This document shows, piece after piece, positions 19,346 through 41,869 of a stretch of 64,000 bases of DNA. The DNA lies in IMG/VR virus record IMGVR_UViG_3300008117_000011, positions 159,672-223,671 of that record; one strand, 5' to 3'. A program made the translations under genes and the position numbers. The notes under the pieces are model-generated. The model ran no database searches. It saw only the letters and a list, made by a program, of their open reading frames with translations, and had not been told where the DNA came from. Within the stretch, counting starts at the first letter, position 1. Every line of letters begins with the position of its first letter.

Positions 19346-21106
19346 TTGGATTTAAAAAATAATCTAATAGAACACAAAGCTCTTGATTTGTTAGACTCGT
19401 ATAGTGGTGCTAACAATTATATCCTTTATATGAAATCAAAAAAGGATGTAAATAAAAAGTTCTACCCCACAAGAACTCAGGCTGATTATATTATTAATTA
19501 TTTTGATGTAAAACCAAAGGTTGCAAGGAAGTGGGTTGATCTTGATTCTTATTTTGCAAATAAGTTTGCTAAAGATAGATACCTACTTGAAATACCAGAA
19601 AAAGTTTATATTGAAAAACTACTTGTTGAAAAAGATAAGTCCTACCATATTTGGGGTAAGTTCTTTGAGAAGGATAATTTATCAGAATTTTGGGTACCAA
19701 AATCATCATTAATAAAATCACATACGATAGAAAAGGTTGATATTGATTATTCTAAATATGGTCACAGACCACCTTTGTCTCACCAAAAAGAAGCGATAGA
19801 AAAACTTGTTGGGTCAAAAAGATTTATATTGGCAGACGATATGGGGCTTGGAAAAACAACCTCTACAATTATTGGAGCTCTTGAGACTGGTGCTAAAAAA
19901 ATTCTAATCATATGTCCAGCGTCACTTAAAATTAACTGGGAAAGAGAAATAAAAAACTATACCGATAGGAGTGTTTACATTTGTGAAGGAAAAAAATACT
20001 CAACAGATGAAGATTTTACAATTGTAAACTATGACATATTAAAAAACTTTTACGATCCTAAAGACAAAGAAAATTCTGAACTTGTTAAAACAAAATATGA
20101 TTTAGTAATTTTAGATGAAGCCCATATGGTTTCAAACGCTCAAGCTCAAAGAACAAAAATTATTAACAATTTTGTTAAAGATATAAAACAAGTTTGGCTT
20201 TTGACTGGAACACCAATGACATCAAGACCAATCAACTATTATAATCTTCTTAATATTATTGAAAGTCCGGTGGCACAAAACTGGATGGCGTATGCAATTC
20301 GTTATTGTCAGGGGTATCAGTTTAGAGCTGGTAATAGAAAAGTATGGAACGTAACCGGGGCTTCAAATCTTGAAGAACTCCGAGATAGGACATCAAAACA
20401 AATTCTTCGTAGATTAAAAGAAGAGGTGTTAGATTTACCTGAAAAAATAATAACCCCGGTTTATTTAAGAACCTCATCAAGAGAGTATAAAGATTTAATG
20501 GGTGAGTACTACGAGTGGTTAAAAAACAAAAAAGAAGAATCATCATCTCTTACAATTCAGTTCACAAAACTTATGAAAGTAAGAAAGGTAATCGCAAATG
20601 AAAAAGTTAAAGACACAATTGAGTTCGCACAAAATATTATAGACCAAGGAAAAAAAGTAATCATATTTACAAATTTTACCGATACCCTACAACTAATTCA
20701 TAATCACTTTGGTAAAGAATCGGTGTATCTTGATGGTAGTTGTAATAAAGTACAAAGACAATATGCTGTTGATCAATTCCAGGATAATGAAAAAATTAAA
20801 GTTTTTGTTGGTAACTTAAAAGCCGCTGGTGTTGGTCTTACATTAACCTCAGCCGAAGTTGTAATAATGAATGATTTATCTTTTGTTCCTGCGGAACACG
20901 CACAAGCTGAAGATAGGGCTTACAGATATGGTCAAAAAAATAATGTACTTGTTTATTACCCAATATTTGAAAACACAATAGAAGGTGTTGTGTATGATAT
21001 TTTAAATACAAAGAAAAAAATAATAGGGACTGTAATGGGTGATGAGGTTACAGAATCTTTTGACGTTGTTGAAGAAATCCTAAATCTTATAAACTCAAAA
21101 AGGTAG
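19346..21106 (+). CDS. SNF2-family helicase, HARP/SMARCAL1-like
   Basis: LADDMGLGKT, DEAH, LTGTP, GVGLTLT, QAEDRAYRYGQ. Confidence 0.92.
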   Translation: MDLKNNLIEHKALDLLDSYSGANNYILYMKSKKDVNKKFYPTRTQADYIINYFDVKPKVARKWVDLDSYFANKFAKDRYLLEIPEKVYIEKLLVEKDKSYHIWGKFFEKDNLSEFWVPKSSLIKSHTIEKVDIDYSKYGHRPPLSHQKEAIEKLVGSKRFILADDMGLGKTTSTIIGALETGAKKILIICPASLKINWEREIKNYTDRSVYICEGKKYSTDEDFTIVNYDILKNFYDPKDKENSELVKTKYDLVILDEAHMVSNAQAQRTKIINNFVKDIKQVWLLTGTPMTSRPINYYNLLNIIESPVAQNWMAYAIRYCQGYQFRAGNRKVWNVTGASNLEELRDRTSKQILRRLKEEVLDLPEKIITPVYLRTSSREYKDLMGEYYEWLKNKKEESSSLTIQFTKLMKVRKVIANEKVKDTIEFAQNIIDQGKKVIIFTNFTDTLQLIHNHFGKESVYLDGSCNKVQRQYAVDQFQDNEKIKVFVGNLKAAGVGLTLTSAEVVIMNDLSFVPAEHAQAEDRAYRYGQKNNVLVYYPIFENTIEGVVYDILNTKKKIIGTVMGDEVTESFDVVEEILNLINSKR

Positions 21107-21137
21107 AAATAACCTAATTTGTATATTTATTATATAA

Positions 21138-23219
21138 ATGAGAGTTAAAGTAAAACACGTAAAATGTGATATGTCTGAAAAGGACAAAGAACTTATGAAC
21201 GATTTTATTAAGTTCTTACAGAAGAAGTATCCTTTAAAGGATGATATTACTATTATTTTTACCGGTGAAAGATATGGTAAAATGTCCACAGGTAGTAGGA
21301 CACAAGATTCTGAACTTAAGATTTTCACTAAAGACAGAATGAATAGGGATATTGTAAGAACATTAGCTCACGAATGGATACACGAAAGACAAATTAAAAT
21401 CCAAGGTAAAAAACCAAAACAAGATATTGGTGGTCCCCTTGAAGATGAGGCAAACGCAAAAGCTGGTTCTGCAATTAAACAGTTTGAAAAGGAGTTTCCA
21501 AAAAAAGAAGAGTTAATGTACGAAGGTATAAATAATAAGTTAAATCTGATTAACGAGCAAATCTTATTAAAGGAAAAGGAAAATATTAAAGGTGAGTTTT
21601 TAACCGAAATGAAAAAAATCGGTATTGAAAAATTACCTTATTCATATTCAGCTTTAAAACAATTTGTGGATCCGGAAACAATGGATATTCATTACAACAA
21701 ACACTATAAAGGTTATGTCAAAAAATTAAATGACGCTCTTTCTAATAAAAAAGGTGAAATGGAGCTTGAGGATATTGTAAAAACAATATCAAAGTTTAAC
21801 ACTAAAGTTAGAAACAATGCTGGTGGTGCTTTTAATCACGCGTTATTTTGGAAAATGTTATCACCAAAAAAACAATTACCAAAAGGTGAGATATTAGAAA
21901 AAATTACAAAACAATATGGTAACATCAAAAAAATGAAAGATGAATTCAATGATGTTGCTAAAGAAAGATTTGGGTCCGGATGGGTTTGGCTTGTTTTAAC
22001 AAAGACAAATAGACTTAAAATTATGTCAACACCAAACCAAGATAATCCACTTATGAATGTTATTAAAGATGGTGGATATCCACTTTTAGGTTTAGATTTA
22101 TGGGAGCATGCTTATTATTTGAAGTATAGAAATAAAAGGGATGAATACATTAAAAATTTCTGGAATTCTGTAAACTGGGAATTTGTAAATGAACTTTTTG
22201 TTTCAAAGACAACAAAAAAGTTAAATGAATCATATATGAAAATTTTATTAGAAAACGAGGATTTACAACCAGATCTGAAAAAAATTATGAGTCGTGAATT
22301 ACAAAAAATTAGACTTATACCATTAGATGCTGAGGCAGGAGCCGAAGCAATTAACAACATTACAACAGCTGAAATTTCAAGGGGGAACCTTGACTTTAAT
22401 AGGACTATAAGTGGACTTATGACTCTTGATTTATCAACTGTTTCTGAAAGATCAAAATATAGATTTAATAATTATTTTCAAAGATTTATTAAAAGCAAAA
22501 CTAGAGGTTTTGACTTTGAGGGTATGGTTACCGGATTTCTTGATGGTGAACTAGCAACAAGCTTATCGTCTCCTTATGATATCTCAACATCAGAGGGAGA
22601 TTTAATTTCTTGTAAAGTAGTTAGAGACACTAATGAAAGAATATCACTTAAAAGTATTAGGACTGGGGTTAAAGATTTTGTTGAGAAATACGAAGGGTCA
22701 GAAGAAAATAAATATATATTAAGTGGGTTAACTCAATTTCCAAATTTTTTAGAACTAGTTGTAACACACGAAAATTCAGATATACAAAATCAAGGTGAAG
22801 ATATTTTAAACAAATTACTTATTGATATTACAGGATTACTTGTTGGTGTACCAAACTCACAAAATCTTGGGGTTGATTTATACTACTATGATAAAGCTCG
22901 TCTAATTGAACTTGCTAAAACACCAGGAATTCTAAAAGCTGGAAGATCAGCTGAAGCTCAAACAATATCCTATTCGGCTAAAATACTTAAAATGGGTACA
23001 ACCAAAAGTGGGTTTATTCAGTTTCCGATTGTTACTCAAGAACAATATGCCGAATTTTTAATTGGTAATGAAAAAACAAAAGAAATTGTAAATATTTTTA
23101 ACACTATGGGTGAAAAATATGGAGTCCCAAGATTAGGTGACAATATCCCACAAGATATTATTAGGGATTTATCAAAAAATGAAAGATTCAAATTAGATAT
23201 TAGAAGAATACTTAAATAA
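21138..23219 (+). CDS. Fusion of HExxH metallopeptidase-like domain, Fe/Mn superoxide dismutase and PD-(D/E)xK nuclease-like domain
   Basis: TLAHEWIH..EDEANA; SOD motifs LPY, HYNKH, NNAGGAFNHALFW, FGSGWVWL, DLWEHAYY; C-terminal GFDFEG..PYDI..ISCK. SOD call is strong, nuclease call is tentative. Confidence 0.8.
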   Translation: MRVKVKHVKCDMSEKDKELMNDFIKFLQKKYPLKDDITIIFTGERYGKMSTGSRTQDSELKIFTKDRMNRDIVRTLAHEWIHERQIKIQGKKPKQDIGGPLEDEANAKAGSAIKQFEKEFPKKEELMYEGINNKLNLINEQILLKEKENIKGEFLTEMKKIGIEKLPYSYSALKQFVDPETMDIHYNKHYKGYVKKLNDALSNKKGEMELEDIVKTISKFNTKVRNNAGGAFNHALFWKMLSPKKQLPKGEILEKITKQYGNIKKMKDEFNDVAKERFGSGWVWLVLTKTNRLKIMSTPNQDNPLMNVIKDGGYPLLGLDLWEHAYYLKYRNKRDEYIKNFWNSVNWEFVNELFVSKTTKKLNESYMKILLENEDLQPDLKKIMSRELQKIRLIPLDAEAGAEAINNITTAEISRGNLDFNRTISGLMTLDLSTVSERSKYRFNNYFQRFIKSKTRGFDFEGMVTGFLDGELATSLSSPYDISTSEGDLISCKVVRDTNERISLKSIRTGVKDFVEKYEGSEENKYILSGLTQFPNFLELVVTHENSDIQNQGEDILNKLLIDITGLLVGVPNSQNLGVDLYYYDKARLIELAKTPGILKAGRSAEAQTISYSAKILKMGTTKSGFIQFPIVTQEQYAEFLIGNEKTKEIVNIFNTMGEKYGVPRLGDNIPQDIIRDLSKNERFKLDIRRILK

Positions 23220-23250: not shown

Positions 23251-24378
23251 ATGGCAATTATTGGTGAACCACAAAGAAGTCAACTATATACTAAAGTAAG
23301 ACATTTACTTGGTGCCCCACAAAGAAGTGTGGAATTAGAGGACGAACAAATGGATACATTACTTGAATTCTCAATTGATGAATATTCACAGTATGTCCAA
23401 GATTGGTTAATTGAATCTCAATGGACCGCTCTTAATAACTTAAATCTGGATACGCAATCTTTAAGTAGGGCTTTTACGACTAGAAGTTTGGATTATGAAA
23501 CAAGATATACTTACGCCTATTCTAAGATAGTTGGTTTGCAGGCCGGTGGTGAATGGGAATTAAAAAAAGATTATATACAATTAGTACCAAATCAACAGAT
23601 ATATGAAATACCGGCGGGTAGAGAATTAAATGAATTATTGTGGTTTACGCCAGCAACAATGAACAATATGTTATTTGATCCTTGGGCTTTTGGGGGTATC
23701 GCTGGTGGTGGTATTGCTGGTCCAGCAGGTTACGCTCAAGTTGGTAACTTATCTGGTAGTTACTTTATGATGCCAGCTTTTGATATGCTTTTAAGGATGC
23801 AAGAAATTAATATACAAAGAAGAATTATTGCTGGTGATTTAACTTATAGAGTAACCGCTCTTCCGGGTGGGAAAAAGGCGGTTCACTTAATGAACACACC
23901 AGGTGGTAAATTTGACTTTGGTAACTCAACCCTTATGAAGGGTAGAGTTTGGTATTGGTATTATGACACAACTGATGGTGACAAGGATAAGTGTCTGGCC
24001 GATAATCCGGATATTATTAAATTACCATCTGATGTTCCGTTTGACAAAATGAACTGGGATGAGTTAAATAATCCAGCACAAGTTTGGGTTAGAAGATGGT
24101 TTATCGCATATTGTAAAGAAACATTATCTAGAGTTCGTGGAAAATTTAGTGGTAACTTAAAAACTGGTGATGGTGGTGATTTAACAATGGATTATACCTC
24201 ACTTGCAACTGAAGCCAAAGATGAAAAGTCAAAATTAATTGAAGAACTAATTGGTGCTGAAGGAAGACTTACAAGATTGAAACCTGAAAAGGTTATGGAA
24301 AGGGAGGCTCTTATTGCTGAAAACTTAAATAAACAGCTCAAGTTTAGAGCGATGCCGAGACAAATTTATGTAATATAA
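23251..24378 (+). CDS. Neck / head-tail adaptor protein (gp13-like)
   Basis: LLGAPQRSVELEDEQ; WVRRWFIAYCKETLSRVRGKFSG; LATEAKDEKSKLIEEL. Confidence 0.75.
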   Translation: MAIIGEPQRSQLYTKVRHLLGAPQRSVELEDEQMDTLLEFSIDEYSQYVQDWLIESQWTALNNLNLDTQSLSRAFTTRSLDYETRYTYAYSKIVGLQAGGEWELKKDYIQLVPNQQIYEIPAGRELNELLWFTPATMNNMLFDPWAFGGIAGGGIAGPAGYAQVGNLSGSYFMMPAFDMLLRMQEINIQRRIIAGDLTYRVTALPGGKKAVHLMNTPGGKFDFGNSTLMKGRVWYWYYDTTDGDKDKCLADNPDIIKLPSDVPFDKMNWDELNNPAQVWVRRWFIAYCKETLSRVRGKFSGNLKTGDGGDLTMDYTSLATEAKDEKSKLIEELIGAEGRLTRLKPEKVMEREALIAENLNKQLKFRAMPRQIYVI

Positions 24379-31303: not shown

Positions 31304-32938
31304 TTAACATTCTTTTCTTAATTCTGCTGGATAAAAATCAAAACGATTATGTTCGGTTGGTGTTATAAGAAGAAGTCCAGGATTTAATTTACCTTTAACT
31401 AAATTTTGAAAGTTATGGGACATTAAAGTTTGTTCATAAGGATTGTCAAATTTTGTCTCAATATAACATTTGTAATTACCTTCTTTTGATAAGACAATTG
31501 GCCAATTAGAAAGATAGATTTCCCCACTAGCGTAGGGGATACCATTTAATGATTTTATATTTTTAAATTCTAGACTTGGGGCGCTTGGATCATAACCAAC
31601 AACTGGTAGATTTGGTTTTTCCGGCCAATGATTTTCTCTGAAACTTTGGGGTGTATTGTACCAAGCCCATTGTGTTGTGTGACTTCCGAAAAATTCAGTA
31701 AAATTTAATTTTAAAAAATCAAAATTTTCTTTTTTAATTATTTGTAATGACGTACTATATAAATTTTTTACTTTTCTATTAAAACCATTTTTACAAACAT
31801 CACAATCTTTAGTAACAAAAGCCATATCGTCCTCAAAGAAATAGTAATAACCCAAATCGTCTTGTTGATTAAAGTGTTCGGCAATAAATTGTCTACCACC
31901 GGTAATACCTATATTATCTTTTTTAATATGTTCAAAACCATATTGTGAACAAAGATTTAAATATTCTTTTGTTGTTGTTAAATCCGTTGAGTTATCCAGT
32001 AAAAATTTTTTTGTTTTTGTTATAAAATCTATATCGTACTCTAACATTGATTCAATTAAAGTTTCAAATTGTTTTGGTGAGTTAAACGTAATAACATATA
32101 GACCAACATCATTACCTTCTTTTTTTACTTTATTATTTTTAATATTTTCAAAAAACGTATATAATAAACCATCAGAATTAATAAGGTAATTATCAATTAA
32201 ATTTGGGTGTAAATAACTCATAATCGTAAAGATACTTTCTTCTGTTCCCATTAAATTATTATTTAATGTATGTGTAAGTAAACTATAATATATTGTGTTT
32301 AAATCGCTAATATATTTTTTAGGACCACCAAAAAAACCACCCCTACTTACATAGTTTGTTTTTGTTTTTGCATACTCACATAACTTATCGTATGAAAATC
32401 CGTGAACCTCTGTGTTTGCCTCATATGGAAAAGATATAAATAAAAACTTATCGTATTTTTTATTTATTTTCTCAAGAACATTATCATTTGTGAAATATCC
32501 TGGACTTACTGTGTTTGAGATTCCAGCGTCAATCCAGAATAGTTTTTCAGAATTAAATTTATCTAAAATTACAGCATCGTGCAGTAAAAACATTTTAGAC
32601 ATTACAATTGGATTATACATCTCAAGTTTTGCTTGTGTTGATTCTTTTAACCAACCAACTTGATTGTACCAATTTTCATTTGTTCTTATTTTTTGTATTT
32701 TGTCAAAAAATTCATTATTTCTAAACCAAGAAAGGTCCCGGATAATAAATTGTGTTTTTGACATATCCCTTCTTTCACTAACAAATTTATAAAGAGATTC
32801 GTCCCCAAAAATTATGAGATTACAATCAATTTTTAATAAATCATCAAATTTATTTAAATAGTAATCAAAAGACCTATTCCATCCTTTTTCTAAATTACCC
32901 CTACCAATATCCCATAATCCGGTAACAAGTGTCATCAT
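31304..32938 (-). CDS. HtrL/YibB-like glycosyltransferase fused to a second GT-A-like domain
   Basis: TLVTGLWDIGR, MSKMFLL, FWIDAG, GGFFGG, GTEESI; second domain YYFFEDD. Confidence 0.7.
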   Translation of the reverse strand: MMTLVTGLWDIGRGNLEKGWNRSFDYYLNKFDDLLKIDCNLIIFGDESLYKFVSERRDMSKTQFIIRDLSWFRNNEFFDKIQKIRTNENWYNQVGWLKESTQAKLEMYNPIVMSKMFLLHDAVILDKFNSEKLFWIDAGISNTVSPGYFTNDNVLEKINKKYDKFLFISFPYEANTEVHGFSYDKLCEYAKTKTNYVSRGGFFGGPKKYISDLNTIYYSLLTHTLNNNLMGTEESIFTIMSYLHPNLIDNYLINSDGLLYTFFENIKNNKVKKEGNDVGLYVITFNSPKQFETLIESMLEYDIDFITKTKKFLLDNSTDLTTTKEYLNLCSQYGFEHIKKDNIGITGGRQFIAEHFNQQDDLGYYYFFEDDMAFVTKDCDVCKNGFNRKVKNLYSTSLQIIKKENFDFLKLNFTEFFGSHTTQWAWYNTPQSFRENHWPEKPNLPVVGYDPSAPSLEFKNIKSLNGIPYASGEIYLSNWPIVLSKEGNYKCYIETKFDNPYEQTLMSHNFQNLVKGKLNPGLLLITPTEHNRFDFYPAELRKEC

Positions 32939-34182
32939 AAATTACCAACTATTCTTTCTCCCCAACCTTTTGATGCCGAGTGTGGCCATACAACCCAATA
33001 CGCTGGTTTTTCTGAGGTGTTAAATTCTCTCCATATTTTTCCGTAACCATCTGGATCATTTTTTATTCTATTAATTTCATCTGGTTGTGCGTCTTGCCTA
33101 AATAGGGTTTCATCATTTTTATTATGAAACGCAACAACAAAGAAATTATAATCTGTTTCCGGAACCTTATCTAATGGCAAATCAATACAATGTTTGAATA
33201 TTGTAAAGAAACTTTTTTCCCAATCCTCTTCTGTTGAAAAATCGTATGGGTTTGGTGGATACTTTTTATCTAATGTATATTGTTGTACTGACCTATTTGA
33301 AAACTTTATTCCGGCGTACTTTTCATAGTCCTTAATTGTTCTTTCAGAACCAAATCCATACTTACCAAGGTCTTCTTCATATTTCTCATTATCAATACCA
33401 AGTATCTTTCTATTCTTTTCGTGTGATGAATTATTTTTCTTCCACCATTCTTTATTGTCATCCCATTGTTTTGTTCTGTTCTTTCTGGTGTACTCGTGCC
33501 AGATAACAACTTTATGTGGGTGAAACAAATCATATCCGTGAGTAAATGCCCTAACGGCAATTGATATTTCTTCTCCGTGAAAATAATAATCCGGGTCGTG
33601 CTGAACTTCCGTTGAGAATTGTCCTAACGTGAAACAAAAATGTGCCGAGTAAAATCTAGCCCTTAATGGTTTTTTAATTTTTTGCCACCCTGGGATTACC
33701 TCTGGTAGAAAAAATACAACTCCTTCCGGTGTGAATCTATCAAAGGCCATTCTCCAAGGTTCACCAACTCTACCAGCCGGGTCGTTGTCCGGATCAAAAG
33801 ATGAAACATAACCTGTAAGTAATGGTTTTTTAACTCCATCTTTTTGTAATCCTTGTAACATTCTGATTAAGATTTGATCCCAGTTTTTCTCAAAACGCAT
33901 GTGGGAATCAACTTGAAGAGTATACTCTTCTCCTTTATATAATTGTTGTACCTGGTTTCTAGCCCAACAAACACCTGTTGATTCTGAATATAAGACATCT
34001 AAAATTCTAAATCTTTCATCATCTTTATATTCCGATAAATCATCAAAACCATCTTCTGGATGATACTGACGACAAATACCAAAAACTAAATTTTCTGGGT
34101 GTTTTGCGTTTGATAAACAATCTTTAACTGTTGGGATAAGTTGGGGGTCTCTATATGATGCAATTTGTATAAAAATCTTCAT
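32935..34182 (-). CDS. GT60-family polypeptide GlcNAc transferase (Skp1 Gnt1-like)
   Basis: IFIQIASYRD, GVCWAR, LQVDSHMRF..WD, FHGEE, RAFTHGYD, WHEY. Confidence 0.8.
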   Translation of the reverse strand: MKIFIQIASYRDPQLIPTVKDCLSNAKHPENLVFGICRQYHPEDGFDDLSEYKDDERFRILDVLYSESTGVCWARNQVQQLYKGEEYTLQVDSHMRFEKNWDQILIRMLQGLQKDGVKKPLLTGYVSSFDPDNDPAGRVGEPWRMAFDRFTPEGVVFFLPEVIPGWQKIKKPLRARFYSAHFCFTLGQFSTEVQHDPDYYFHGEEISIAVRAFTHGYDLFHPHKVVIWHEYTRKNRTKQWDDNKEWWKKNNSSHEKNRKILGIDNEKYEEDLGKYGFGSERTIKDYEKYAGIKFSNRSVQQYTLDKKYPPNPYDFSTEEDWEKSFFTIFKHCIDLPLDKVPETDYNFFVVAFHNKNDETLFRQDAQPDEINRIKNDPDGYGKIWREFNTSEKPAYWVVWPHSASKGWGERIVGNL

Positions 34183-34281
34183 ATAGAAAAATTAACGATT
34201 TTTTATTTTAAATAAATAATATTCAAAACCTAATTCTATATATTTCTACTAATGTTTTACTATTTTTTTCATAACAATTAA

Positions 34282-36414
34282 TTGATAACTTTAATGAAAA
34301 AATTAATGATAATAACACCCCATTTGTCAACAGGGGGTCAACCACAATTCTTATTAAAAAAGATTGAATTATTAAAAGATACGTACGACTTATACTGTGT
34401 TGAATATAACTTTGTGTCTCCAGATTTTGTTGTACAAAGAAATAAAATAAAAAATTTATTAATACTTAATTTTATCTCATTAGAAGAAAATGAATTGAGA
34501 TTGACAAATGTTATTAAGGATATAAATCCAGATATAATTTGGTTTGAGGAGTTACCAGAAACGTTTATAACAAACGAAGAATGTGAGTACATTTATAAAA
34601 AAGAAAGAAGTTGGCAAATAATTGAAACGACCCATTCCTCCCAAGATTTAAGTTTTAAAAAAAGATACGCTCCGGATAAATTTATTTTTGTATCCGATTT
34701 ATCAGTTAAACAATACGACAATTTAGGAATTGAATCTTCAGTAATTCAATACCCAGTAAACAAGAAAACAAAAAATACTGACAACTTTAAAAGTAAGTTA
34801 TCATTTGATAATGAGTATAAACATATTGTAATTGTTGGGTTATTTACCCAGGGTAAAAATCAATCGTATGCTTTTGATATTGCAAGAAAATTAGAAAAAG
34901 AAAAAGTATTATTTCACTTTGTTGGTAATACTGCAATCAATTTTAAAGACTACTGGGAACCACTACTTTTAAATAAACCTAAAAATTGTATACTACACGG
35001 AGAAAAAGAAAATATTGATGATTATTTACAAGCTTCTGATTTATTTTTATTTCCCTCAAAATTTGAATTAAATCCTTTGGTTGTTAAAGAAGCTCTTTGT
35101 TATGATGAGTTACCTATTGTTATGTTTAATTTAGAATCATATTGTGGTCAGTATGATAATGAACCTAACATTAGTTTTATGAAAAATGACATTAATATTG
35201 ATTCAAAACTAATTAAAGAATTACTTTTTGGTAAAACCAAGACCTATCAAGATATTGAGGGTTGGTTTTCATATGAAGAACTATACAATAAATTTGTAAA
35301 CGAATGTTCTGATGGAAGTACAATTGTTGAAATTGGTAGTTGGTTTGGTAAATCAACAAAATACATTTCAGATAAAATAAAAGAAACAAATAAAAATGTT
35401 AAGTTAATTTCTGTTGATACTTTTAAAGGGTCTCAAAATGAGCAACTCCATATAGATACTGTTGGTAATTTTGATAATGACATATATCAAATTTTCTATG
35501 AAAATTTAATTGGTAATAAAATAGAAGTAATAAAAGACTCTTCACATAACGCTTCTAAATTATTTAACAATGGGTCCATTGATTATCTAATGATTGATGG
35601 GGATCATAGTTATGAAGGTGTTAAAAATGATATTGAAGATTTTTTCTACAAAGTTAAACCGGGTGGTATTATTTCAGGTGATGATTATGTAGTCTTTGAT
35701 GGTGTAACAAAAGCTGTAAATGAGTATTTTAATGGGACTCAAAATATAACAACAAACGGATATAACTGGTATTATAAAATACCTAAAATTCAAGTAATTC
35801 ATATTTCAACATTACCTAAGCAAAAAAGGGCTATAAAATCAATTACAAATATAAAAGAGTTAAAGAGATACAACATTGATATTAAGTTTATTGAGAATTA
35901 TGTATATGATGGTGAAGTTGATGTATCAACCCACAGATATCCAGAAAGTCAAAATATAAATAAGGGTCACTATGGTTGTTATTTAGCACACAAAGAGGCA
36001 ATACATTCAATTGATAATGACTATGACTATACAATTATAATGGAGGAGGACGCTTACATTTTTGAGAATCTTAATGATTTTGTTGATATAGTTCATAAAG
36101 CCATTTTTAATTGTATTAAAGATGAAATATACTTTGTATCATTTGGTGGATTAATTTTAGATTACGCACTAAACGAATATGATAATTTATTTAATGAGTG
36201 TTGGCATCAAACTATGGCTCATTGTTATATGATACCAAACAAGTATAAACAATGGTACGTTGATAAATTTGAGACTAGCCCTTGGGATTCGGCAGATCTT
36301 TGGTTTAACCATATTTTTTGTCACGATAGAAAATTAAGATTAATAACCAAAAAATTCTATAGTAAACAACTAGATGGTACCTCACTTATTGATAATGTAA
36401 AAAAAGAATATTGA
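34282..36414 (+). CDS. Multidomain GT4 glycosyltransferase + class I methyltransferase + GT25-like domain
   Basis: GKNQ, DLFLFPSKFELNPLVVKEA (GT4); VEIGSWFGKS, IDGDHSYE, GGIISGDDY (methyltransferase); GCYLAH, IMEEDA (GT25-like). Confidence 0.8.
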   Translation: MITLMKKLMIITPHLSTGGQPQFLLKKIELLKDTYDLYCVEYNFVSPDFVVQRNKIKNLLILNFISLEENELRLTNVIKDINPDIIWFEELPETFITNEECEYIYKKERSWQIIETTHSSQDLSFKKRYAPDKFIFVSDLSVKQYDNLGIESSVIQYPVNKKTKNTDNFKSKLSFDNEYKHIVIVGLFTQGKNQSYAFDIARKLEKEKVLFHFVGNTAINFKDYWEPLLLNKPKNCILHGEKENIDDYLQASDLFLFPSKFELNPLVVKEALCYDELPIVMFNLESYCGQYDNEPNISFMKNDINIDSKLIKELLFGKTKTYQDIEGWFSYEELYNKFVNECSDGSTIVEIGSWFGKSTKYISDKIKETNKNVKLISVDTFKGSQNEQLHIDTVGNFDNDIYQIFYENLIGNKIEVIKDSSHNASKLFNNGSIDYLMIDGDHSYEGVKNDIEDFFYKVKPGGIISGDDYVVFDGVTKAVNEYFNGTQNITTNGYNWYYKIPKIQVIHISTLPKQKRAIKSITNIKELKRYNIDIKFIENYVYDGEVDVSTHRYPESQNINKGHYGCYLAHKEAIHSIDNDYDYTIIMEEDAYIFENLNDFVDIVHKAIFNCIKDEIYFVSFGGLILDYALNEYDNLFNECWHQTMAHCYMIPNKYKQWYVDKFETSPWDSADLWFNHIFCHDRKLRLITKKFYSKQLDGTSLIDNVKKEY

Positions 36415-36415
36415 T

Positions 36416-38233
36416 ATGAATTCACAAATATTTAAAGAAACAATCATTTCGGAAATAGAAAAAACAAATTTAACAAATAATAAAATTGGTGATATTTTAA
36501 AATTTATTTACACACAAATAAATGGTGCCTTTTTAGAAATAAAAGGTAATGTTGATAAAAATTTTAATGTTAGTTTTGAGGATGACCAGGGAAATATAGT
36601 TTATCAAACTGAATTAAAAACTGATATGTGGTCAAGACTAAATGCTAAGTATTTTAAAAATTATACAATAAAAATACAAAATGATGATTACTATAATGAA
36701 ATAAAAACCGATTTAAAAGATAAAAGAATTTATATAACTCTTGAGTCTAAATCATTAGGTGATACTTTGGCCTGGGTTCCTTATGTTGATGAATTTAGAA
36801 AAAAACATAGTTGTGATATAGTCCTATCAACATTTATGAATGATTTATTTAAGGAGCAATATCCGGAGATAGAATTTGTAGAACCAGGTACTTCTGTAGA
36901 TAATATATTTGGTATGTTTAATATCGGATGGTTTTATAATCAAAATGACGAAATTGATTACAGTAGACACCCAAATAATTTTAGAACTCAACCATTACAA
37001 AAAACGGCTTCAGATATTTTAGGTCTTGACTATGAAGAAATAAGACCAAAATTAAAACTAAAAGAAAATGTTAAAAAAGAAAAAAAAGTAGGTATTGCAA
37101 TACACGGAACCGCCCAAAGTAAGTATTGGAATAACCCAACTGGTTGGCAAGAGGTTGTTGATTATCTAATTAAACTTGGATATGAAGTTGTTTTATATTC
37201 TGTTGAGCCGGATGGTTATATGGGTAATTTTCATCCTACTGGAATTAAAAATTTCCCAAGAAGTCCATTACAAGAAGTAATTTACGATTTGCAAAGTTGT
37301 GAATTTTTTATTGGTATTGGATCTGGTCTTTCTTGGTTAGCCTGGAGTGTTGGTTTACCAACTATTTTAATATCCGGCTTTAGTGAGGAGTACACCGAAA
37401 CAAAATCAAATACTTATCGTGTTATAAATAATAATGTGTGTACCGGGTGTTTTAATTCCCATAGATTAAATCCTAGTGACTGGAATTGGTGTCCTATTCA
37501 TAAAAACACTGAAAGACAATTTGAATGTAGTAAATCAATAAATTCTAAATTAGTTATTAGTAAAATAAAACAAATTGGTTTTAACTGGGGTTTTTTTGAT
37601 TCAGACCAAAACTTTAAAAAACTAGTTGAGGAAGAATTATTTGTTAATAATATATATGAAAAGTATTTTAATATAAAAGATGGGGATATCGTAATGGATA
37701 TTGGTGCTAGTGTTGGTCCTTTTGTAAAATCATTATGTGATAGAAAATTAAAAAAGGTTTACGCTATTGAACCTAGTAAAACGGAGTTTAATATATTAGA
37801 AGAAAATATTAGTAATAAAAATGTTGTTTTAGTAAATAAAGCAATTGGTAATACAAATCAAACAAATTGTCAACTTGATGAAGTATATGGAGATGATAAG
37901 AGTGTTGACTATATTACTTTTGATAAATTATTAGAAGATTATAAAATTGATAAGATAGATTTTTTAAAATTAGATTGTGAAGGTGGTGAGTATGATATAT
38001 TCACAAATGAAAATTTAAAATTTTTAAAACAAATACCAAAAATAGTTGGTGAGTGGCATTTAAATGACCCAACAAAAAAAGAAAAATTTTTTAAATTTAA
38101 AAATGAAATTTTGTCAAACTTTTCTAAATTTACAATAAATTCAGTTGATGGTTACGATATAACACAAAGACTAAACGATCAAAATTTTATAGAGTATTAT
38201 AGTGAGATTTTAATCTACATTGAAAATAATTAA
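36416..38233 (+). CDS. TibC/Aah-like autotransporter O-heptosyltransferase fused to an FkbM methyltransferase
   Basis: SLGDTLAWVPY, QPLQ, KYWNN..GW, FIGIGSGLSWLAW, LISGFS, four-Cys site CTGC..WCP..FECSKSI; C-terminal DIGASVG, IEP, KLDCEGGE. Confidence 0.85.
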   Translation: MNSQIFKETIISEIEKTNLTNNKIGDILKFIYTQINGAFLEIKGNVDKNFNVSFEDDQGNIVYQTELKTDMWSRLNAKYFKNYTIKIQNDDYYNEIKTDLKDKRIYITLESKSLGDTLAWVPYVDEFRKKHSCDIVLSTFMNDLFKEQYPEIEFVEPGTSVDNIFGMFNIGWFYNQNDEIDYSRHPNNFRTQPLQKTASDILGLDYEEIRPKLKLKENVKKEKKVGIAIHGTAQSKYWNNPTGWQEVVDYLIKLGYEVVLYSVEPDGYMGNFHPTGIKNFPRSPLQEVIYDLQSCEFFIGIGSGLSWLAWSVGLPTILISGFSEEYTETKSNTYRVINNNVCTGCFNSHRLNPSDWNWCPIHKNTERQFECSKSINSKLVISKIKQIGFNWGFFDSDQNFKKLVEEELFVNNIYEKYFNIKDGDIVMDIGASVGPFVKSLCDRKLKKVYAIEPSKTEFNILEENISNKNVVLVNKAIGNTNQTNCQLDEVYGDDKSVDYITFDKLLEDYKIDKIDFLKLDCEGGEYDIFTNENLKFLKQIPKIVGEWHLNDPTKKEKFFKFKNEILSNFSKFTINSVDGYDITQRLNDQNFIEYYSEILIYIENN

Positions 38234-38501: not shown

Positions 38502-41500
38502 TTATCCTACCCAAGTTAACTTAACATAACTGTTCCACCAGAACGTAGTTGGTGCTGCATTTGTAGTATTTTGAGCACCCTGAACGCTTACAGTTACCGT
38601 TGTTACCGGCGCTAGAGTACCTTTTATTGTATAAATACCAGCTCCAGCTGTATTTGTTGCAAATTCTGAACCAGCAAATATAGTTCCTCCGGCGGCAATT
38701 TGATTATTTTCGTATAAACCATTACCAACACTATAATTACTTCCTAGGTCAATTCTACCCCAGGTTCCAGAAACTGTTAGTAATCTTAATCTTGCACCAC
38801 CAGCACCAGCTGTTACCCTACCATATAGTTCAATTTCATATATTGACCCAGCGTTAAGAACAAACGTCATACTAGGTAAATCAACAAATGTGTTATTAGT
38901 GAACGCTAAATCATTAGTTTGTCTAATAAAATCACCATAAAAAACTTTATGTCTAGCATCACTATTTGTTGTATATAGTTGATTACTATTATATTCTATC
39001 GTACCAGCCTCTGGTGTTGTATTTAATGTACCATTAGTAAATTTAAGAGGTGCAGTTCCAGCGGTTGCAGCTCCAGCTCCTAAATGTAGTTTTGCTGTTG
39101 GTGTTCCTTGTGTAATCCCAATAGCATTGGCGGACGCGTCTAAAAAAAACATATTTGTTTGCGTGTCTGACTCAATTCTAAAATCTGAATTAGCATCCCC
39201 CACTTCATTAAATATACTACTACCCTGAGTTGATCTGTATGCAATATTAGTGGTTCCAATAGAGGCTATCGCTTCAAATGCGATATTAGTTGCAGTCCCA
39301 TTAACAGAAGAATCAACCCCAATTGATGTACCACCAACAGAATCTGCGGAAGCTCTAAGACCAAATGTTTGCCCATTGGATGCATTTGATCTTCCGACCA
39401 GTAATCCACTTGATGGTCCTCCCGCCGCAGCAACACTTGATTGGTTAACAATACTATAAGGGTTTGCAAACGTTGTTGTTAAAAGCGAAGCGTTCCCTAT
39501 AAGATCAAGATTAAATGATGGTGTTGTATTTATACCTAGTTGCGTCCCATTAAATATTAAATTTGCTTCGCCTTGTAGTGTATTTGCCGTTCCGGTTGCT
39601 GTTACTACATAGTCATTTACGTTATTGTTTATAATAACACTAGCACCAGATGTCCCAGAAGAACCCCCACTACCTGCAGTACCAGAAGTACCATTAACTC
39701 CAGATGTTCCAGAAGTACCATTAACTCCAGATGTTCCAGAGGATCCACCACTCCCACTAGTACCTCTAGTGCCACTTGTCCCAGAAGAACCTCCACTACC
39801 CGCAGTACCACTCGTTCCATTTATTCCAGAAGTTCCAGAAGTTCCATTAACGCCAGAAGTCCCACTCGTTCCATTTATTCCACTAGTTCCACCACTACCC
39901 GCGGTACCTGATGTACCGTTAATACCAGAGGTTCCACCACTACCAGAAGTCCCTCTAGTACCACTTGTACCACCACTACCTGCGGTACCACTCGTTCCAT
40001 TTATTCCAGAAGTTCCACTCGTTCCATTTATCCCACTAGTACCAGAAGTTCCTGAAGAACCTCCGCTACCTGCAGTACCACTCGTTCCATTTATTCCAGA
40101 AGTTCCATTTATTCCACTTGTACCTCCACTACCAGAAGTACCATTTATTCCACTTGATCCTCCACTGCCAGAAGTTCCAGAGGTACCATTTATACCGGAA
40201 GTACCACTCGTTCCGTTAATACCAGAAGTCCCAGAAGTTCCACTCGTTCCGTTAATACCAGAAGTCCCAGAAGTTCCACCACTACCAGAAGTCCCTCTAG
40301 TACCACTCGTACCACTTGTTCCGTTAACACCAGAAGTTCCATTTGTTCCATTAATGCCAGATGTCCCTGAAGTTCCATTAATACCAGATGTCCCTGAAGA
40401 ACCACCACTACCAGAAGTCCCAGAAGTTCCAGAAGACCCCCCACTACCAGCAGTACCACTCGTTCCATTTATTCCCCCACTACCAGCAGTACCACTCGTT
40501 CCGTTTATTCCAGACGTGCCAGAAGTTCCTGAAGAACCTCCGCTACCGGATGTTCCATTAGTCCCATTTATTCCACTAGTTCCTGAAGTACCCCCACTAC
40601 CAGAAGTTCCACTTGTACCACCACTGCCCGCTGTACCTGATGTGCCATTAATACCAGAAGTTCCTCCGCTACCTGCAGTCCCACTCGTTCCGTTTATTCC
40701 AGACGTGCCAGAAGTTCCTGAAGTTCCTGAAGAACCTCCGCTACCGGATGTTCCATTAGTCCCAGAAGAACCACTTGTTCCGGATGTCCCATCAATTCCA
40801 CTAGTACCAGAAGTTCCGTTAACACCAGAAGTACCACTAGTCCCATCAATTCCACTAGTACCAGAAGTTCCGTTAACACCAGAAGTACCATTGGTTCCGG
40901 AAGACCCTCCACTACCGCTTGTCCCATTAGTTCCAGAAGATCCGCTAGTTCCATCAACACCACTAGTACCAGAGGTTCCATCAACACCACTAGTACCAGA
41001 GGTTCCATCAACACCACTAGTACCAGAAGTTCCGTCAACACCACTAGTACCAGAAGTTCCATTTGTTCCAGAAGTTCCATTAACACCACTAGTTCCAGAA
41101 GTTCCATTAACACCACTAGTTCCAGAAGTTCCATTAACACCACTAGTTCCAGAAGTTCCATCTACCCCACTAGTACCTGATGTACCGTCAATTCCACTGG
41201 TACCAGAAGTTCCGTTAGTACCTGATGTACCGCTAATACCATTGGTACCAGACGTTCCATCAATTCCAGAGGTTCCATTTATACCGCTTGTACCAGAAGA
41301 GCCATCTACGCCACTTGTTCCAGAAGTTCCATCTACCCCACTAGTACCGGAAGTTCCATCTACCCCACTAGTACCGGAAGTTCCATTTGTTCCAGAAGTA
41401 CCCCAGAGGTTCCACTTGTACCAGAAGTACCATCAATACCACTAGTACCAGAAGTTCCATCAATACCACTAGTACCGGATGTTCCGTCAATACCACTAGT

Positions 41501-41869
41501 ACCATCAATTCCAGAGGTCCCAGAGGTTCCGTCAATCCCTGATGTACCAGAAGTGCCGTCTATACCAGAGGTTCCGTCTACCCCACTAGTGCCAGATGTA
41601 CCATCAATACCTGATGTTCCAGAAGTACCATCAACACCAGAAGTACCAGAAGTTCCGTCTATACCAGAGGTCCCAGAGGTGCCTGCGGTTCCAGAAGTTC
41701 CACTTGAACCAAAAGTTGTTGATATATAGTTTGCAACTTGATCTATTGTTGCCTTATATGAAGAACCCCCTGAATATTGTATTGTATCACCGGTATTTAC
41801 GATGTGAATTAATGTATCACCAGTTATATATGGGGCAATTGTTCTATCTGTTAATCTTTGTTGTGACAT
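38502..41869 (-). CDS. Gly-Thr-Ser collagen-like fibre protein (~1121 aa if repaired), frame broken at 41401-41404
   Basis: ORF 41360..41869 leaves the GTS frame at a CCCC run; the other frame continues through the repeat into SGASVIINNNVNDYVVTATG..GEANLIF..FNEVGDANSDFRIESD and ORF 38502..39203; removing 2 nt gives 1122 codons. Confidence 0.8.
39645..41710 (-). repeat. ~2.06 kb coding Gly-X-Y repeat (GTS, GSS, GIN, GVN, GID, GVD, GTA, GTR), about 230 triplets
   Basis: 9 nt periodicity (gttccagaa / gtaccacta variants) with synonymous divergence. Confidence 0.92.

What the first reader, a model, noticed from the sequence alone, without database searches (positions are those of the whole stretch)
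21138..23219. Peptidase-SOD-nuclease fusion that looks like a protease-processed capsid cargo polyprotein
Seen: three unrelated domains, HExxH (~21138-21520), a complete SOD (~21609-22200; GG and QD residues favour the Mn type) and a PD-(D/E)xK-like domain (~22250-23219). The linkers are dense in L/I-x-E (LINEQILLKE, FLTE, KLNES, ILLENE). The gene carries the putative late motif and precedes the neck gene. Established: the T4 prohead protease gp21 cleaves after L/I-x-E in head proteins. Inference: the product is packaged, cut into separate enzymes and ejected, giving immediate superoxide protection plus peptidase and nuclease effectors.
Basis: partly seen in the sequence, partly recalled or inferred. 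Interest (0 to 1): 0.78.

Follow-up and report, generated by a model that had tools for sequence, protein, structure and literature searches.

The report
Phage zincin–MnSOD–nuclease fusion, likely capsid cargo
A large lake phage distantly related to T4 has joined three enzyme genes (a small zinc peptidase-like domain, a manganese superoxide dismutase and a restriction-nuclease-like domain) into one protein whose joints look like cut sites for the phage's head-maturation protease, so it may be packed into the virus head, cut apart and injected into the host, though no experiment has tested this yet.

Summary
ORF 21138-23219 (+) encodes 693 aa with three modules: a minimal gluzincin (1-129), a complete Mn-type SOD (164-352) and a restriction-endonuclease-fold domain (386-693). 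The nuclease-like domain keeps an invariant E461...D481...S491-x-K493 site.

Five of the nine L/I-x-E motifs lie in the two linkers, and only those five are conserved (88-100% of 93 homologues).

- The lineage is a distant T4-like jumbo myovirus, and three complete relatives encode a gp21-type (S77) prohead protease.
- That protease's expected substrates carry the same motif clusters.
- The module boundaries equal natural protein ends. Stand-alone zincins stop at E129. N-less SODs and stand-alone C-domains start with short leaders ending in L/I-x-E.
- The third module is swapped (at least four families) or absent (31 of 75 loci), always at the junction.
- Neighbouring small genes carry conserved L/I-x-E leaders on variable bodies, like T4 internal-protein loci.

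Packaging, cleavage and ejection are untested, and no cultured relative exists. The N-terminus has no cleavable leader. Similar leaders sit on at least 21 other proteins, so they may serve another purpose.

Verdict: a new variant of known kinds (T4 CTS cargo, polyvalent proteins).

The parts
21124..21130 (+). Promoter-like motif TATTTAT, ending 7 nt before the ATG
   Evidence: It is conserved upstream of this gene in nearly all fetched loci, often just after a terminator hairpin. In G000 it lies within 25 nt upstream of 53 of 280 ORFs, including neck and tail genes. Position verified.
21138..23219 (+). Whole ORF, 693 aa (stop included): zincin, leader+MnSOD, leader+nuclease-like domain
   Evidence: About 100 near-full-length homologues at 55-100% identity are listed (93 of 683-705 aa were aligned). 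The search counted 1223 proteins at E<=0.001.
21138..21524 (+). N-module, residues 1-129: minimal gluzincin (HEWIHE 78-83 = nt 21369-21386; EDEANA 102-107 = nt 21441-21458)
   Evidence: The motifs are invariant. The model has pLDDT 88. Best fold matches are Wss1 (TM 0.56-0.59), SprT-like, DUF4157 and IrrE-N. Stand-alone 129-aa homologues end exactly at the residue matching E129.
21525..21626 (+). Linker 1, residues 130-163: the SOD's internalised leader, with L/I-x-E at E140, E146 and E157
   Evidence: The motifs are kept in 90-100% of 93 homologues. The linker is homologous to the N-terminal leader of N-less variants P0115/P0118, 'MEQKA.LLKE|..ISE|AKKIG'.
21627..22193 (+). Mn-type superoxide dismutase domain, residues 164-352
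   Evidence: Pfam hits. The ligand and Mn-type motifs are conserved. Full-length alignment to solved MnSODs.
22194..22292 (+). Linker 2, residues 353-385: the C-module's internalised leader, with L/I-x-E at E364 and E372
   Evidence: The motifs are kept in 88-98% of homologues. This is the breakpoint for all alternative third modules. Residues 366-376 have pLDDT below 50 in the model.
22293..23216 (+). C-module, residues 386-693: restriction-endonuclease (PD-(D/E)xK) fold, core about 443-642; candidate active site E461 (nt 22518-22520), D481 (22578-22580), S491-C-K493 (22608-22616)
   Evidence: Model pLDDT 88. Foldseek and VIA hits are NhoI, HinP1I, ThaI, Eco15I and PvuII. E461, D481 and K493 are 98-100% conserved and S491 is 89% conserved (E in 2) across 55 divergent family members.
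23251..24378 (+). Downstream neighbour: T4 gp13-type neck (head-completion) gene
   Evidence: PF26809 Phage_T4_gp13 is recorded on the orthologues in all four contexts. A weak phrog_211 adaptor hit was also found.
19346..21106 (+). Upstream neighbour: SNF2-family helicase. Relatives carry 0-3 small leader-bearing genes between it and the SOD gene

Best explanation
The gene is a fusion of three once-separate phage genes, and its product is probably head-packaged cargo.

Shown:
- Module 1 is a minimal zinc metallopeptidase-like domain (residues 1-129).
- Module 2 is a complete Mn superoxide dismutase with its own N-terminal leader (130-about 361).
- Module 3 is a restriction-endonuclease-fold enzyme with its own leader (about 362-693).
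- Each module boundary coincides with a natural protein end in stand-alone homologues.
- The two 'linkers' are those leaders. Each carries 2-3 conserved L/I-x-E motifs.
- The phage lineage is a distant T4-like jumbo myovirus that encodes a gp21-type prohead protease.
- The gene sits in a variable locus next to the neck gene. Many neighbouring small genes there have the same kind of leader on diverse bodies.

Inferred:
- As with T4 internal proteins and Alt, the product is built into the prohead core late in infection.
- The gp21-type protease cuts it after the linker Glu residues into a free zincin, a free MnSOD and a free nuclease-like enzyme.
- These stay in the head and enter the host with the DNA.
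- There the SOD lowers superoxide at the start of infection. The nuclease-like and peptidase-like parts act on host or competitor targets.
For: 1. Three modules are present.
2. L/I-x-E sites are concentrated and conserved only in the linkers.
3. A gp21/S77 protease (E about 1e-23; phrog_207 7e-43) lies in T4 head-gene order in three complete relatives, one of which has the same N-SOD-C gene.
4. Presumptive substrates show the same signature. The capsid N-terminal 59 aa has 5 sites ending 'LINE|A'. A 237-aa protein with no family hit, in the slot between portal and protease, has 6.75 sites per 100 aa. The background is 1.26.
5. Module ends equal natural termini. Stand-alone zincins end at '..MYE'. 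N-less SOD proteins start with the linker-1 homologue. Of 54 stand-alone C-family proteins, 45 start with a leader ending in L/I-x-E, most often at residue 11.
6. The third slot is polymorphic. Of 75 loci, 31 have none, 30 have C, and 7, 4 and 3 have other modules. Every junction has 1-2 sites. A small third module also exists as two stand-alone genes with an 'MKIIITE..IKE' leader.
7. The slot upstream holds small genes with conserved two-site leaders and variable bodies.
8. The promoter-like motif is shared with neck and tail genes and is enriched on leader-bearing genes.
9. Established T4 biology: gp21 cuts after L/I-X-E; the 10-aa CTS MKTYQEFIAE targets proteins to the head and is removed; Alt is trimmed at both ends; foreign enzymes including nucleases can be packaged (PMC9026906, PMC8442874).
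Against: - There is no direct evidence of packaging or cleavage. No cultured phage carries the family, so no proteome exists.
- The window's own record is 76% complete and lacks the head module and protease, so the protease is inferred from relatives.
- The fusion's N-terminus is a structured beta-strand of the zincin with no cleavable leader. In T4 the targeting signal is N-terminal, so targeting here is unexplained.
- Leaders of the same classes sit on at least 21 other ORFs, including a sigma factor, mostly in a block of small genes. That is a very large cargo set, or a sign that the leaders do something else.
- L/I-x-E is a short motif that amphipathic helices can produce.
- The homologues are related, so the conservation counts are not independent.
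- The protease-linker complex prediction gave no answer.
Confidence: 0.5

Rival explanations
1. It is a self-processing polyvalent protein. The N-terminal zincin, not the prohead protease, cuts the chain at the linkers, before packaging or after injection, as proposed for zincin-like metallopeptidase domains of phage polyvalent proteins.
For: The N-module has an intact HExxH plus Glu-helix site, invariant in all homologues. The same fold is an N-terminal module on other phage enzymes: NT5C, nucleotidyltransferases and SOD. Zincin MPTases are the hub domain of polyvalent proteins and are predicted to autoprocess them (PMC5512222).
Against: Variants without the N-module (P0115, P0118, P0122) keep the same L/I-x-E junctions. 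Stand-alone C-family and small proteins carry such leaders with no zincin in the same chain. Cutting after Glu in L/I-x-E is the documented specificity of gp21, and nothing links it to this zincin. Trans action of the single-copy zincin is not excluded.
Confidence: 0.12
2. It is not packaged and not cut. The protein is a cytoplasmic multi-enzyme made during infection (ROS protection plus DNA or protein degradation). The L/I-x-E-rich segments are amphipathic helical spacers or leaders with another role, such as partner docking, oligomerisation or constraints on translation starts of near-leaderless mRNAs.
For: Leaders of the same classes occur on at least 21 ORFs, including a sigma factor, in a block of small genes. 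The promoter motif lies only 4-7 nt from many of these ATGs. The stand-alone zincin sits in a metabolic region, not a structural one, in other jumbo phages. Part of linker 2 is predicted helical. There are no virion data.
Against: This does not explain why L/I-x-E, rather than any helix-forming pattern, is the conserved feature at every junction and leader. It does not explain why the same motif clusters mark the capsid propeptide and the protein in the portal-protease slot. It does not explain the fixed position next to the neck gene.
Confidence: 0.28
3. It is tail- or neck-associated cargo. The N-terminal zincin acts like DUF4157 on eCIS toxins, marking a payload for the contractile tail or neck rather than for the head.
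For: The N-domain resembles a DUF4157 model (AFDB E 2.4e-5, TM 0.66/0.61). DUF4157 is an N-terminal HExxH domain on toxins of phage-tail-like injection particles, with a suspected role in loading or maturation (PMC8213781). The gene lies between sheath/tube genes and the neck gene.
Against: There is no sequence-level DUF4157 match. SprT-like and IrrE-like neighbours score similarly. This reading does not explain the gp21-type motifs. The stand-alone zincin is not linked to tail genes elsewhere.
Confidence: 0.1

Closest known systems
T4 internal proteins IPI-III and Alt (capsid-targeting sequence cargo processed by gp21)
   Same: The phage has T4-type neck, sheath, baseplate, portal, protease and capsid genes. 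Short leaders end in L/I-x-E. The cargo bodies are variable and sit in a plastic locus. Enzymes would be delivered with the DNA (PMC9026906, PMC8442874).
   Different: Here several leader-tagged cargos are joined in one chain, so the leaders are internal. The chain's N-terminus has no leader. The cargo types (MnSOD, REase-fold enzyme, zincin) are not T4 cargo. There is no sequence homology to T4 IPs and no experimental data.
Phage-type polyvalent proteins (Iyer, Burroughs, Anand, de Souza, Aravind 2017; PMC5512222)
   Same: It is a multidomain phage protein with a zincin-like metallopeptidase hub of the described core (beta-sheet, N-terminal helix, HExxH helix, Glu helix) joined to unrelated enzymes, predicted to be processed and delivered on infection.
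   Different: It has only three domains. SOD is not mentioned in that paper (0 occurrences). The junctions carry prohead-protease-type motifs. The modules have demonstrable stand-alone, leader-bearing versions.
Ejection or inner-body proteins of giant phages (phiKZ, 201phi2-1, SPN3US) cut by gp21-related proteases
   Same: These are jumbo phages in which many head proteins are cut after Glu at a short motif by a diverged gp21 homologue (PMC9026906; PMC5694885 abstract).
   Different: The lineage here is T4-like in its tail, neck and head genes. No SOD or nuclease cargo was found in the papers read.
DUF4157 N-terminal domain on eCIS toxins
   Same: It is an N-terminal HExxH domain followed by variable effector domains in a contractile-injection context, and it shows structural similarity.
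   Different: There is no sequence-family membership. eCIS cargo loads in the tube. The role of DUF4157 is itself unknown.
Virion-packaged Cu/Zn SOD of chlorovirus PBCV-1
   Same: It is a virus-encoded SOD, expressed late and packaged in the virion, associated with lower superoxide early in infection (PMC7019647).
   Different: It is an unrelated SOD family (Cu/Zn versus Mn), in a eukaryotic virus, stand-alone, with no proteolytic release.

Membership tests
Fe/Mn superoxide dismutase (Mn type) | Both Pfam domains (Sod_Fe_N and Sod_Fe_C) above their cut-offs, covering the full enzyme length | tested here: met
   (77 and 133 bits). One search shows alignment over chain residues 10-199 of a 205-aa MnSOD.
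Fe/Mn superoxide dismutase (Mn type) | Four metal ligands (His in 'IHY', His in 'FNH', Asp and His in 'DLWEH') and Mn-type residues (GG before the second ligand; Q in 'NQD') | tested here: met
   The motifs are present and 98-100% conserved in 93 homologues. MnSODs outscore Fe-SODs by about 15 orders of magnitude in E-value. The assignment of ligand roles rests on established SOD knowledge.
Fe/Mn superoxide dismutase (Mn type) | Dismutase activity and metal content | not testable with these tools
   This needs an enzyme assay.
Zincin (gluzincin) metallopeptidase | HExxH on a helix, followed by a helix that supplies a Glu ligand | tested here: met
   H78, E79, H82 and E102/E104 are invariant. 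They lie on helices 69-87 and 100-119 of the model.
Zincin (gluzincin) metallopeptidase | Zincin fold | tested here: met
   Wss1 5xbv matches with probability 1.0 and TM 0.56/0.59. SprT-like, DUF4157, IrrE-N and WLM models match with TM up to 0.73.
Zincin (gluzincin) metallopeptidase | Membership of a named sequence family (Peptidase_M78, SprT-like, DUF4157) | tested here: not met
   There is no such Pfam or PHROG hit at E<=1. The profile search against PDB sequences returned only noise.
PD-(D/E)xK restriction-endonuclease-like nucleases | Core alpha-beta-beta-beta-alpha-beta fold | tested here: met
   The top Foldseek and VIA matches are almost all PD-(D/E)xK enzymes, with probability 0.96-1.0 and Z 7.1-7.8. 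The Z-scores are moderate, not decisive.
PD-(D/E)xK restriction-endonuclease-like nucleases | Catalytic D...(D/E)-x-K, plus a helix Glu | tested here: inconclusive
   The pattern is E461...D481...S491-x-K493, conserved across 55 divergent members. Ser replaces the acidic residue, and 2 members have Glu there. QxK and NxK variants in known enzymes are recalled from memory, not tested. Residue superposition could not be inspected.
PD-(D/E)xK restriction-endonuclease-like nucleases | Sequence-family membership or nuclease activity | tested here: not met
   There is no Pfam, PHROG or PDB sequence hit. Activity is not testable here.
T4-type CTS cargo processed by gp21 | A gp21-type (S77) prohead protease in the phage | tested here: met
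   It is present in 3 of 3 complete relatives, including one with the same gene. It is absent from the window's own 76%-complete record, which lacks the whole head module.
T4-type CTS cargo processed by gp21 | A short N-terminal leader ending in L/I-x-E on the polypeptide | tested here: inconclusive
   This is met for the SOD and C modules, as internal leaders here and as N-terminal leaders in stand-alone or N-less homologues. It is not met for the fusion's own N-terminus.
T4-type CTS cargo processed by gp21 | Presence in virions and cleavage after the Glu | not testable with these tools
   No cultured relative exists. The complex prediction gave no answer.
Polyvalent proteins (PMC5512222) | Two or more unrelated effector domains in one phage polypeptide, including a zincin-like MPTase | tested here: met
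Polyvalent proteins (PMC5512222) | Delivery into the host with the DNA | not testable with these tools
   This needs virion proteomics or an injection assay.

The most novel reading that the evidence does not exclude
This freshwater T4-like jumbo-phage lineage runs a greatly expanded capsid-targeting system. Dozens of proteins (MnSOD, at least two nuclease-like families, a sigma factor and many unknowns) carry a few families of gp21-cleavable leaders. Gene fusion strings several of them behind a zincin carrier into polyproteins that the prohead protease resolves. On this reading the virion injects a customisable enzyme kit, including the first phage-delivered superoxide dismutase.
Probability: 0.3. 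Interest if true: 0.85.

Novelty: new variant of a known kind. Interest (0 to 1): 0.62.

Why it matters
If true, oxidative-stress control would join the functions a phage particle brings into the cell at the moment of infection. So far that is documented only for a chlorovirus Cu/Zn SOD (PMC7019647).

It would also show that T4-style head targeting and gp21 processing can be used in polyprotein form, with cut sites at internal junctions, and that new cargo is recruited simply by fusing leader-tagged genes.

The conserved leaders give a sequence handle for predicting packaged proteins in uncultured T4-like jumbo phages. The short leader and junction peptides are candidates for loading foreign proteins into phage heads. 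The stand-alone zincin and the E...D...SxK nuclease-like family are abundant, unnamed phage protein families that now have testable active sites.

Tried and rejected
- Pfam and PHROG scans of the N-module, the C-module, the alternative C-modules and the P0118 insert gave nothing usable.
- Profile-versus-PDB sequence searches for the N- and C-domains returned only noise.
- Searches for S77, Gp23 and Portal_T4 in the window's own genome found nothing. This is explained by the incomplete record: tblastn with G003 head proteins also finds none of them in G000.
- Nucleotide and protein searches of cultured phage genomes found only SOD-domain hits or one uncultured huge phage.
- hhalign of the C-domain profile against the alternative modules showed no relation.
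- The atlas search for the X1 module gave no lead.
- The complex prediction of G003 protease with the G003 linker-2 peptide gave 'no answer'. It is not used as evidence either way.
- Rfam and tRNA scans of the window found nothing.
- I considered that the start codon might be M12, as in some database entries. I rejected this because residues 3-8 form a confident strand of the fold, stand-alone homologues start 'MKVxVKH', and the promoter-like motif precedes M1.
- I considered that the upstream partial ORF of the N-less variant might encode a split-off zincin. I rejected this because it is the helicase C-terminus.
- My first clustering of third modules used a faulty filter and was redone.
Full report
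**1. What is there**

The ORF at 21138..23219 (+) is real and encodes 693 aa. The database representative P0001, used in several analyses, differs from the window protein at two non-critical residues (I252T, I451V). The window version therefore has one extra, non-conserved L/I-x-E at residue 254 inside the SOD.

Pfam finds Sod_Fe_N (164-242) and Sod_Fe_C (248-352) and nothing else. PHROGs finds nothing. The SOD aligns over its full length with solved Mn enzymes (E about 1e-60; Fe enzymes about 1e-45). Its ligand and Mn-type motifs are 98-100% conserved in 93 homologues.

**2. The flanking domains**

An alignment-based AlphaFold model of residues 1-135 (pLDDT 88, pTM 0.85) shows a beta-sheet, a helix carrying HEWIHE and a following helix carrying EDEANA. 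All these residues are invariant.
- The nearest solved fold is the minimal protease Wss1. The nearest predicted folds are SprT-like, DUF4157, IrrE-N and WLM zincins.
- No sequence family claims the domain.

The model of residues 366-693 (pLDDT 88, pTM 0.82) matches, at the top of both Foldseek and VIA lists, almost only PD-(D/E)xK restriction enzymes: NhoI, HinP1I, ThaI, Eco15I-N, PvuII, MvaI, DpnI and EcoRV. Probabilities are 0.96-1.0 and Z reaches 7.8. The scores are moderate but point consistently to one fold.

In an exhaustive profile search the domain defines a family of 85 cluster representatives. Across 55 divergent members the near-invariant residues are R442, Y446, R456-G457, F460-E461-G462, D481, S491 (Glu in two members) and K493. 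By the model's secondary structure these lie on the helix, at the start of a strand, and on the next strand. That is where PD-(D/E)xK active sites sit.

The nuclease label rests on the fold plus the conserved site, not on family membership.

**3. The linkers**

Of nine [LI]xE sites in the window protein, five (E140, E146, E157, E364, E372) fall in the 71 linker residues. Only those five are kept as motifs in 88-100% of 93 homologues at 55-100% identity. The genome background is 1.26 sites per 100 aa, against 7.0 in the linkers.

**4. The phage and its protease**

The window is the last 64 kb of a 223.7-kb viral record estimated at 76% complete. It encodes a T4-like sheath, tube and baseplate hub. 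Orthologous contexts show PF26809 (T4 gp13 neck) directly downstream of the SOD gene in every case.

The own record lacks the head module altogether. Three complete relatives of 257-304 kb were examined, one of them with the same N-SOD-C gene:
- All three encode a Peptidase_S77/gp21 protease above Pfam's cut-off.
- In G003 the head genes are in T4 order: portal, small proteins, protease, a scaffold-position protein, then the capsid protein.
- The capsid protein's first 59 residues carry five L/I-x-E sites, the last being 'LINE|A' just before the conserved gp23-like core. All five are conserved in the three genomes.
- A 237-aa protein with no family hit, in the slot between portal and protease where T4 has prohead-core genes, has 16 sites (6.75 per 100 aa).

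T4 gp21 cuts after L/I-X-E. It fragments core proteins at many sites and trims mature head proteins (PMC9026906). The lineage's protease very likely keeps that preference. This is inferred.

**5.

Homologues exchange parts exactly at the linkers.
- P0106 and P0120 share everything up to '...KKLNES' and then diverge completely.
- P0115, P0118 and P0122 lack the zincin and start with a leader homologous to linker 1. They carry an extra module of about 315 aa between the SOD and the C-domain. The gene upstream of P0118 is just the helicase.
- That extra module is homologous to P0120's C-terminal module (29% identity, E 5e-27). It has a 'D...VQVKP' signature, and its nearest named neighbours are PD-(D/E)xK families.

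Among 75 complete genes in viral contigs:

| Architecture | Loci |
|---|---|
| N-SOD only | 31 |
| N-SOD-C | 30 |
| N-SOD + first other module family | 7 |
| N-SOD + second other module family | 4 |
| N-SOD + third other module family | 3 |

Every fused junction has one or two L/I-x-E sites.

Stand-alone 129-aa zincins are very common, with 971 hits. They end at '...KMYE/D', which is residue 129 of the query. Of 54 stand-alone C-family proteins, 45 begin with a short leader ending in L/I-x-E, most often 'MKY[IL]K.[FY]K[IL]FE|S' with the Glu at residue 11. Site density is 4.9 per 100 aa in the first 25 residues and 1.1 in the rest.

In G001 the third module is a unit of about 140 aa. It also exists as two stand-alone genes just upstream, each with an 'MKIIITE..IKE|KLLGL' leader.

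The fusion is therefore zincin + (leader-SOD) + (leader-C).

**6. The locus and the leaders**

In 35 of 77 loci the slot between the helicase and the SOD gene holds one to three small genes. Their 39 distinct products fall mostly into three classes of conserved leader, each with two L/I-x-E sites (at residues 9 and 22, 21 and 33, or 7 and 15), on divergent bodies.

This is the organisation of T4 internal proteins. There a 10-residue capsid-targeting sequence (MKTYQEFIAE) is removed by gp21, and the cargo varies among T4-like phages (PMC8442874, PMC9026906).

The same leader classes occur on at least 21 of 292 ORFs of the own genome, mostly at 5-45 kb. One of these is a sigma-70/ECF-type sigma factor. 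This could mean a very large cargo set. It could also mean the leaders serve another purpose.

**7. Expression signal**

'(G/A)TATTTAT' ends 5-7 nt before the ATG of this gene in nearly all loci, often right after a terminator hairpin.
- In the own genome the motif precedes 53 of 280 ORFs, with two spacing classes (4-7 nt and 12-17 nt).
- It precedes the neck gene and several tail-region genes, but not PolB, the helicase or the methyltransferases.
- It is enriched on leader-bearing genes (12 of 21 against 41 of 259).

This fits co-expression with virion genes, but the timing is not shown.

**8. Mechanism**

Best reading, confidence about 0.5: the protein enters the prohead core late in infection, the gp21-type protease cuts it at the linker Glu residues into three enzymes, and these are carried into the host with the DNA.

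Shown:
- the domain identities;
- the conserved motif placement;
- that the module boundaries equal natural termini;
- the presence of the protease family in the lineage;
- the locus organisation.

Inferred:
- the protease's specificity;
- packaging, cleavage and ejection;
- the physiological roles.

Main difficulties:
- The chain's N-terminus has no leader.
- The leaders are very widespread in the genome.
- There is no proteome.

Rivals:
- Self-processing by the zincin, as proposed for polyvalent proteins (PMC5512222). This is weakened because N-less variants keep the junction motifs.
- A non-packaged cytoplasmic multi-enzyme.
- Tail-loaded cargo by analogy with DUF4157 on eCIS toxins (PMC8213781).

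The one in-silico protease-substrate test returned no answer.

**9. Comparison and novelty**

It works like T4 CTS cargo and like a small polyvalent protein. It is a member of neither by any tested sequence criterion.
- SOD is not mentioned in the polyvalent-protein paper.
- A literature search found no report of a SOD packaged in a bacteriophage virion.
- A virion-packaged SOD is documented for chlorovirus PBCV-1, an unrelated Cu/Zn enzyme.

I rate it a new variant of known kinds. It is of real interest to phage biologists and directly testable, but it is still a hypothesis.

Noticed in passing
G000:C1:5362-86177 (outside the window; e.g. L100:17573-18151 minus strand, L101:3266-3646 minus strand): At least 21 ORFs start with one of three conserved leader families ('MKK.IRLTE..RVIKE', 'MKIIITE.Q', 'MNLQE.IRRILKE'), each with two L/I-x-E sites. 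One of these proteins (192 aa) is a sigma-70/ECF-type sigma factor (Sigma70_r2 1e-12, r4_2 2e-15).
   Followed up: partly
window 21124-21130, and genome-wide: The promoter-like motif TATTTAT lies upstream of 53 of 280 ORFs in two spacing classes (4-7 nt and 12-17 nt before the ATG). The short class would give leaderless or nearly leaderless mRNAs if the motif is a -10-type element.
   Followed up: partly
window about 39200-41869, minus strand (GC 0.45, against 0.30 elsewhere): A collagen-like (Gly-Thr-Ser/Gly-Ile-Asp)n repeat gene starts at 41869 on the minus strand and appears broken over several reading frames. A spurious 606-aa Pro/Val-rich ORF lies on the opposite strand. The cause may be assembly slippage in the repeat or a real frameshift. 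A 233-aa ORF with no family hit (38502-39203) follows it on the minus strand.
   Followed up: no
L001:6640-9546; L090:14400-18422 (minus strand): Relatives carry mobile insertions in core genes. The SNF2 helicase is 968 aa, with weak Hint and faint LAGLIDADG (intein-like) Pfam hits, against 586 aa in the window. The G003 portal is 1339 aa with an HNH-endonuclease segment. A 577-aa homing endonuclease sits next to the capsid gene.
   Followed up: no
L108, L110, L111 (6001-6390 in each): In other jumbo phages (195-320 kb) the stand-alone 129-aa zincin lies between two cell-wall hydrolase genes (SLT or GH19) on the opposite strand, near thymidylate synthase, FKBP and Tad3. The top AFDB structural neighbour of the domain is the N-terminus of a LysM protein. 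This is a possible link to peptidoglycan.
   Followed up: no
P0204 (748 aa): The N-terminal part of a C-domain family member is fused to a polyphosphate kinase 2 domain (PPK2, 4.5e-72). This is another enzyme joined to this family.
   Followed up: no
window 32935-38233: A glycosyltransferase (phrog_24687, 1e-164) lies next to two large proteins with DNA-methyltransferase-like regions. This suggests DNA modification. The C-domain's closest solved folds include methyl-directed enzymes (NhoI, Eco15I), but no link was tested.
   Followed up: no
window 21138-23216 versus P0001: The database representative listed at 100% identity differs from the window protein at I252T and I451V. The window version has an extra, non-conserved ILE site at residue 254.
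   Followed up: yes
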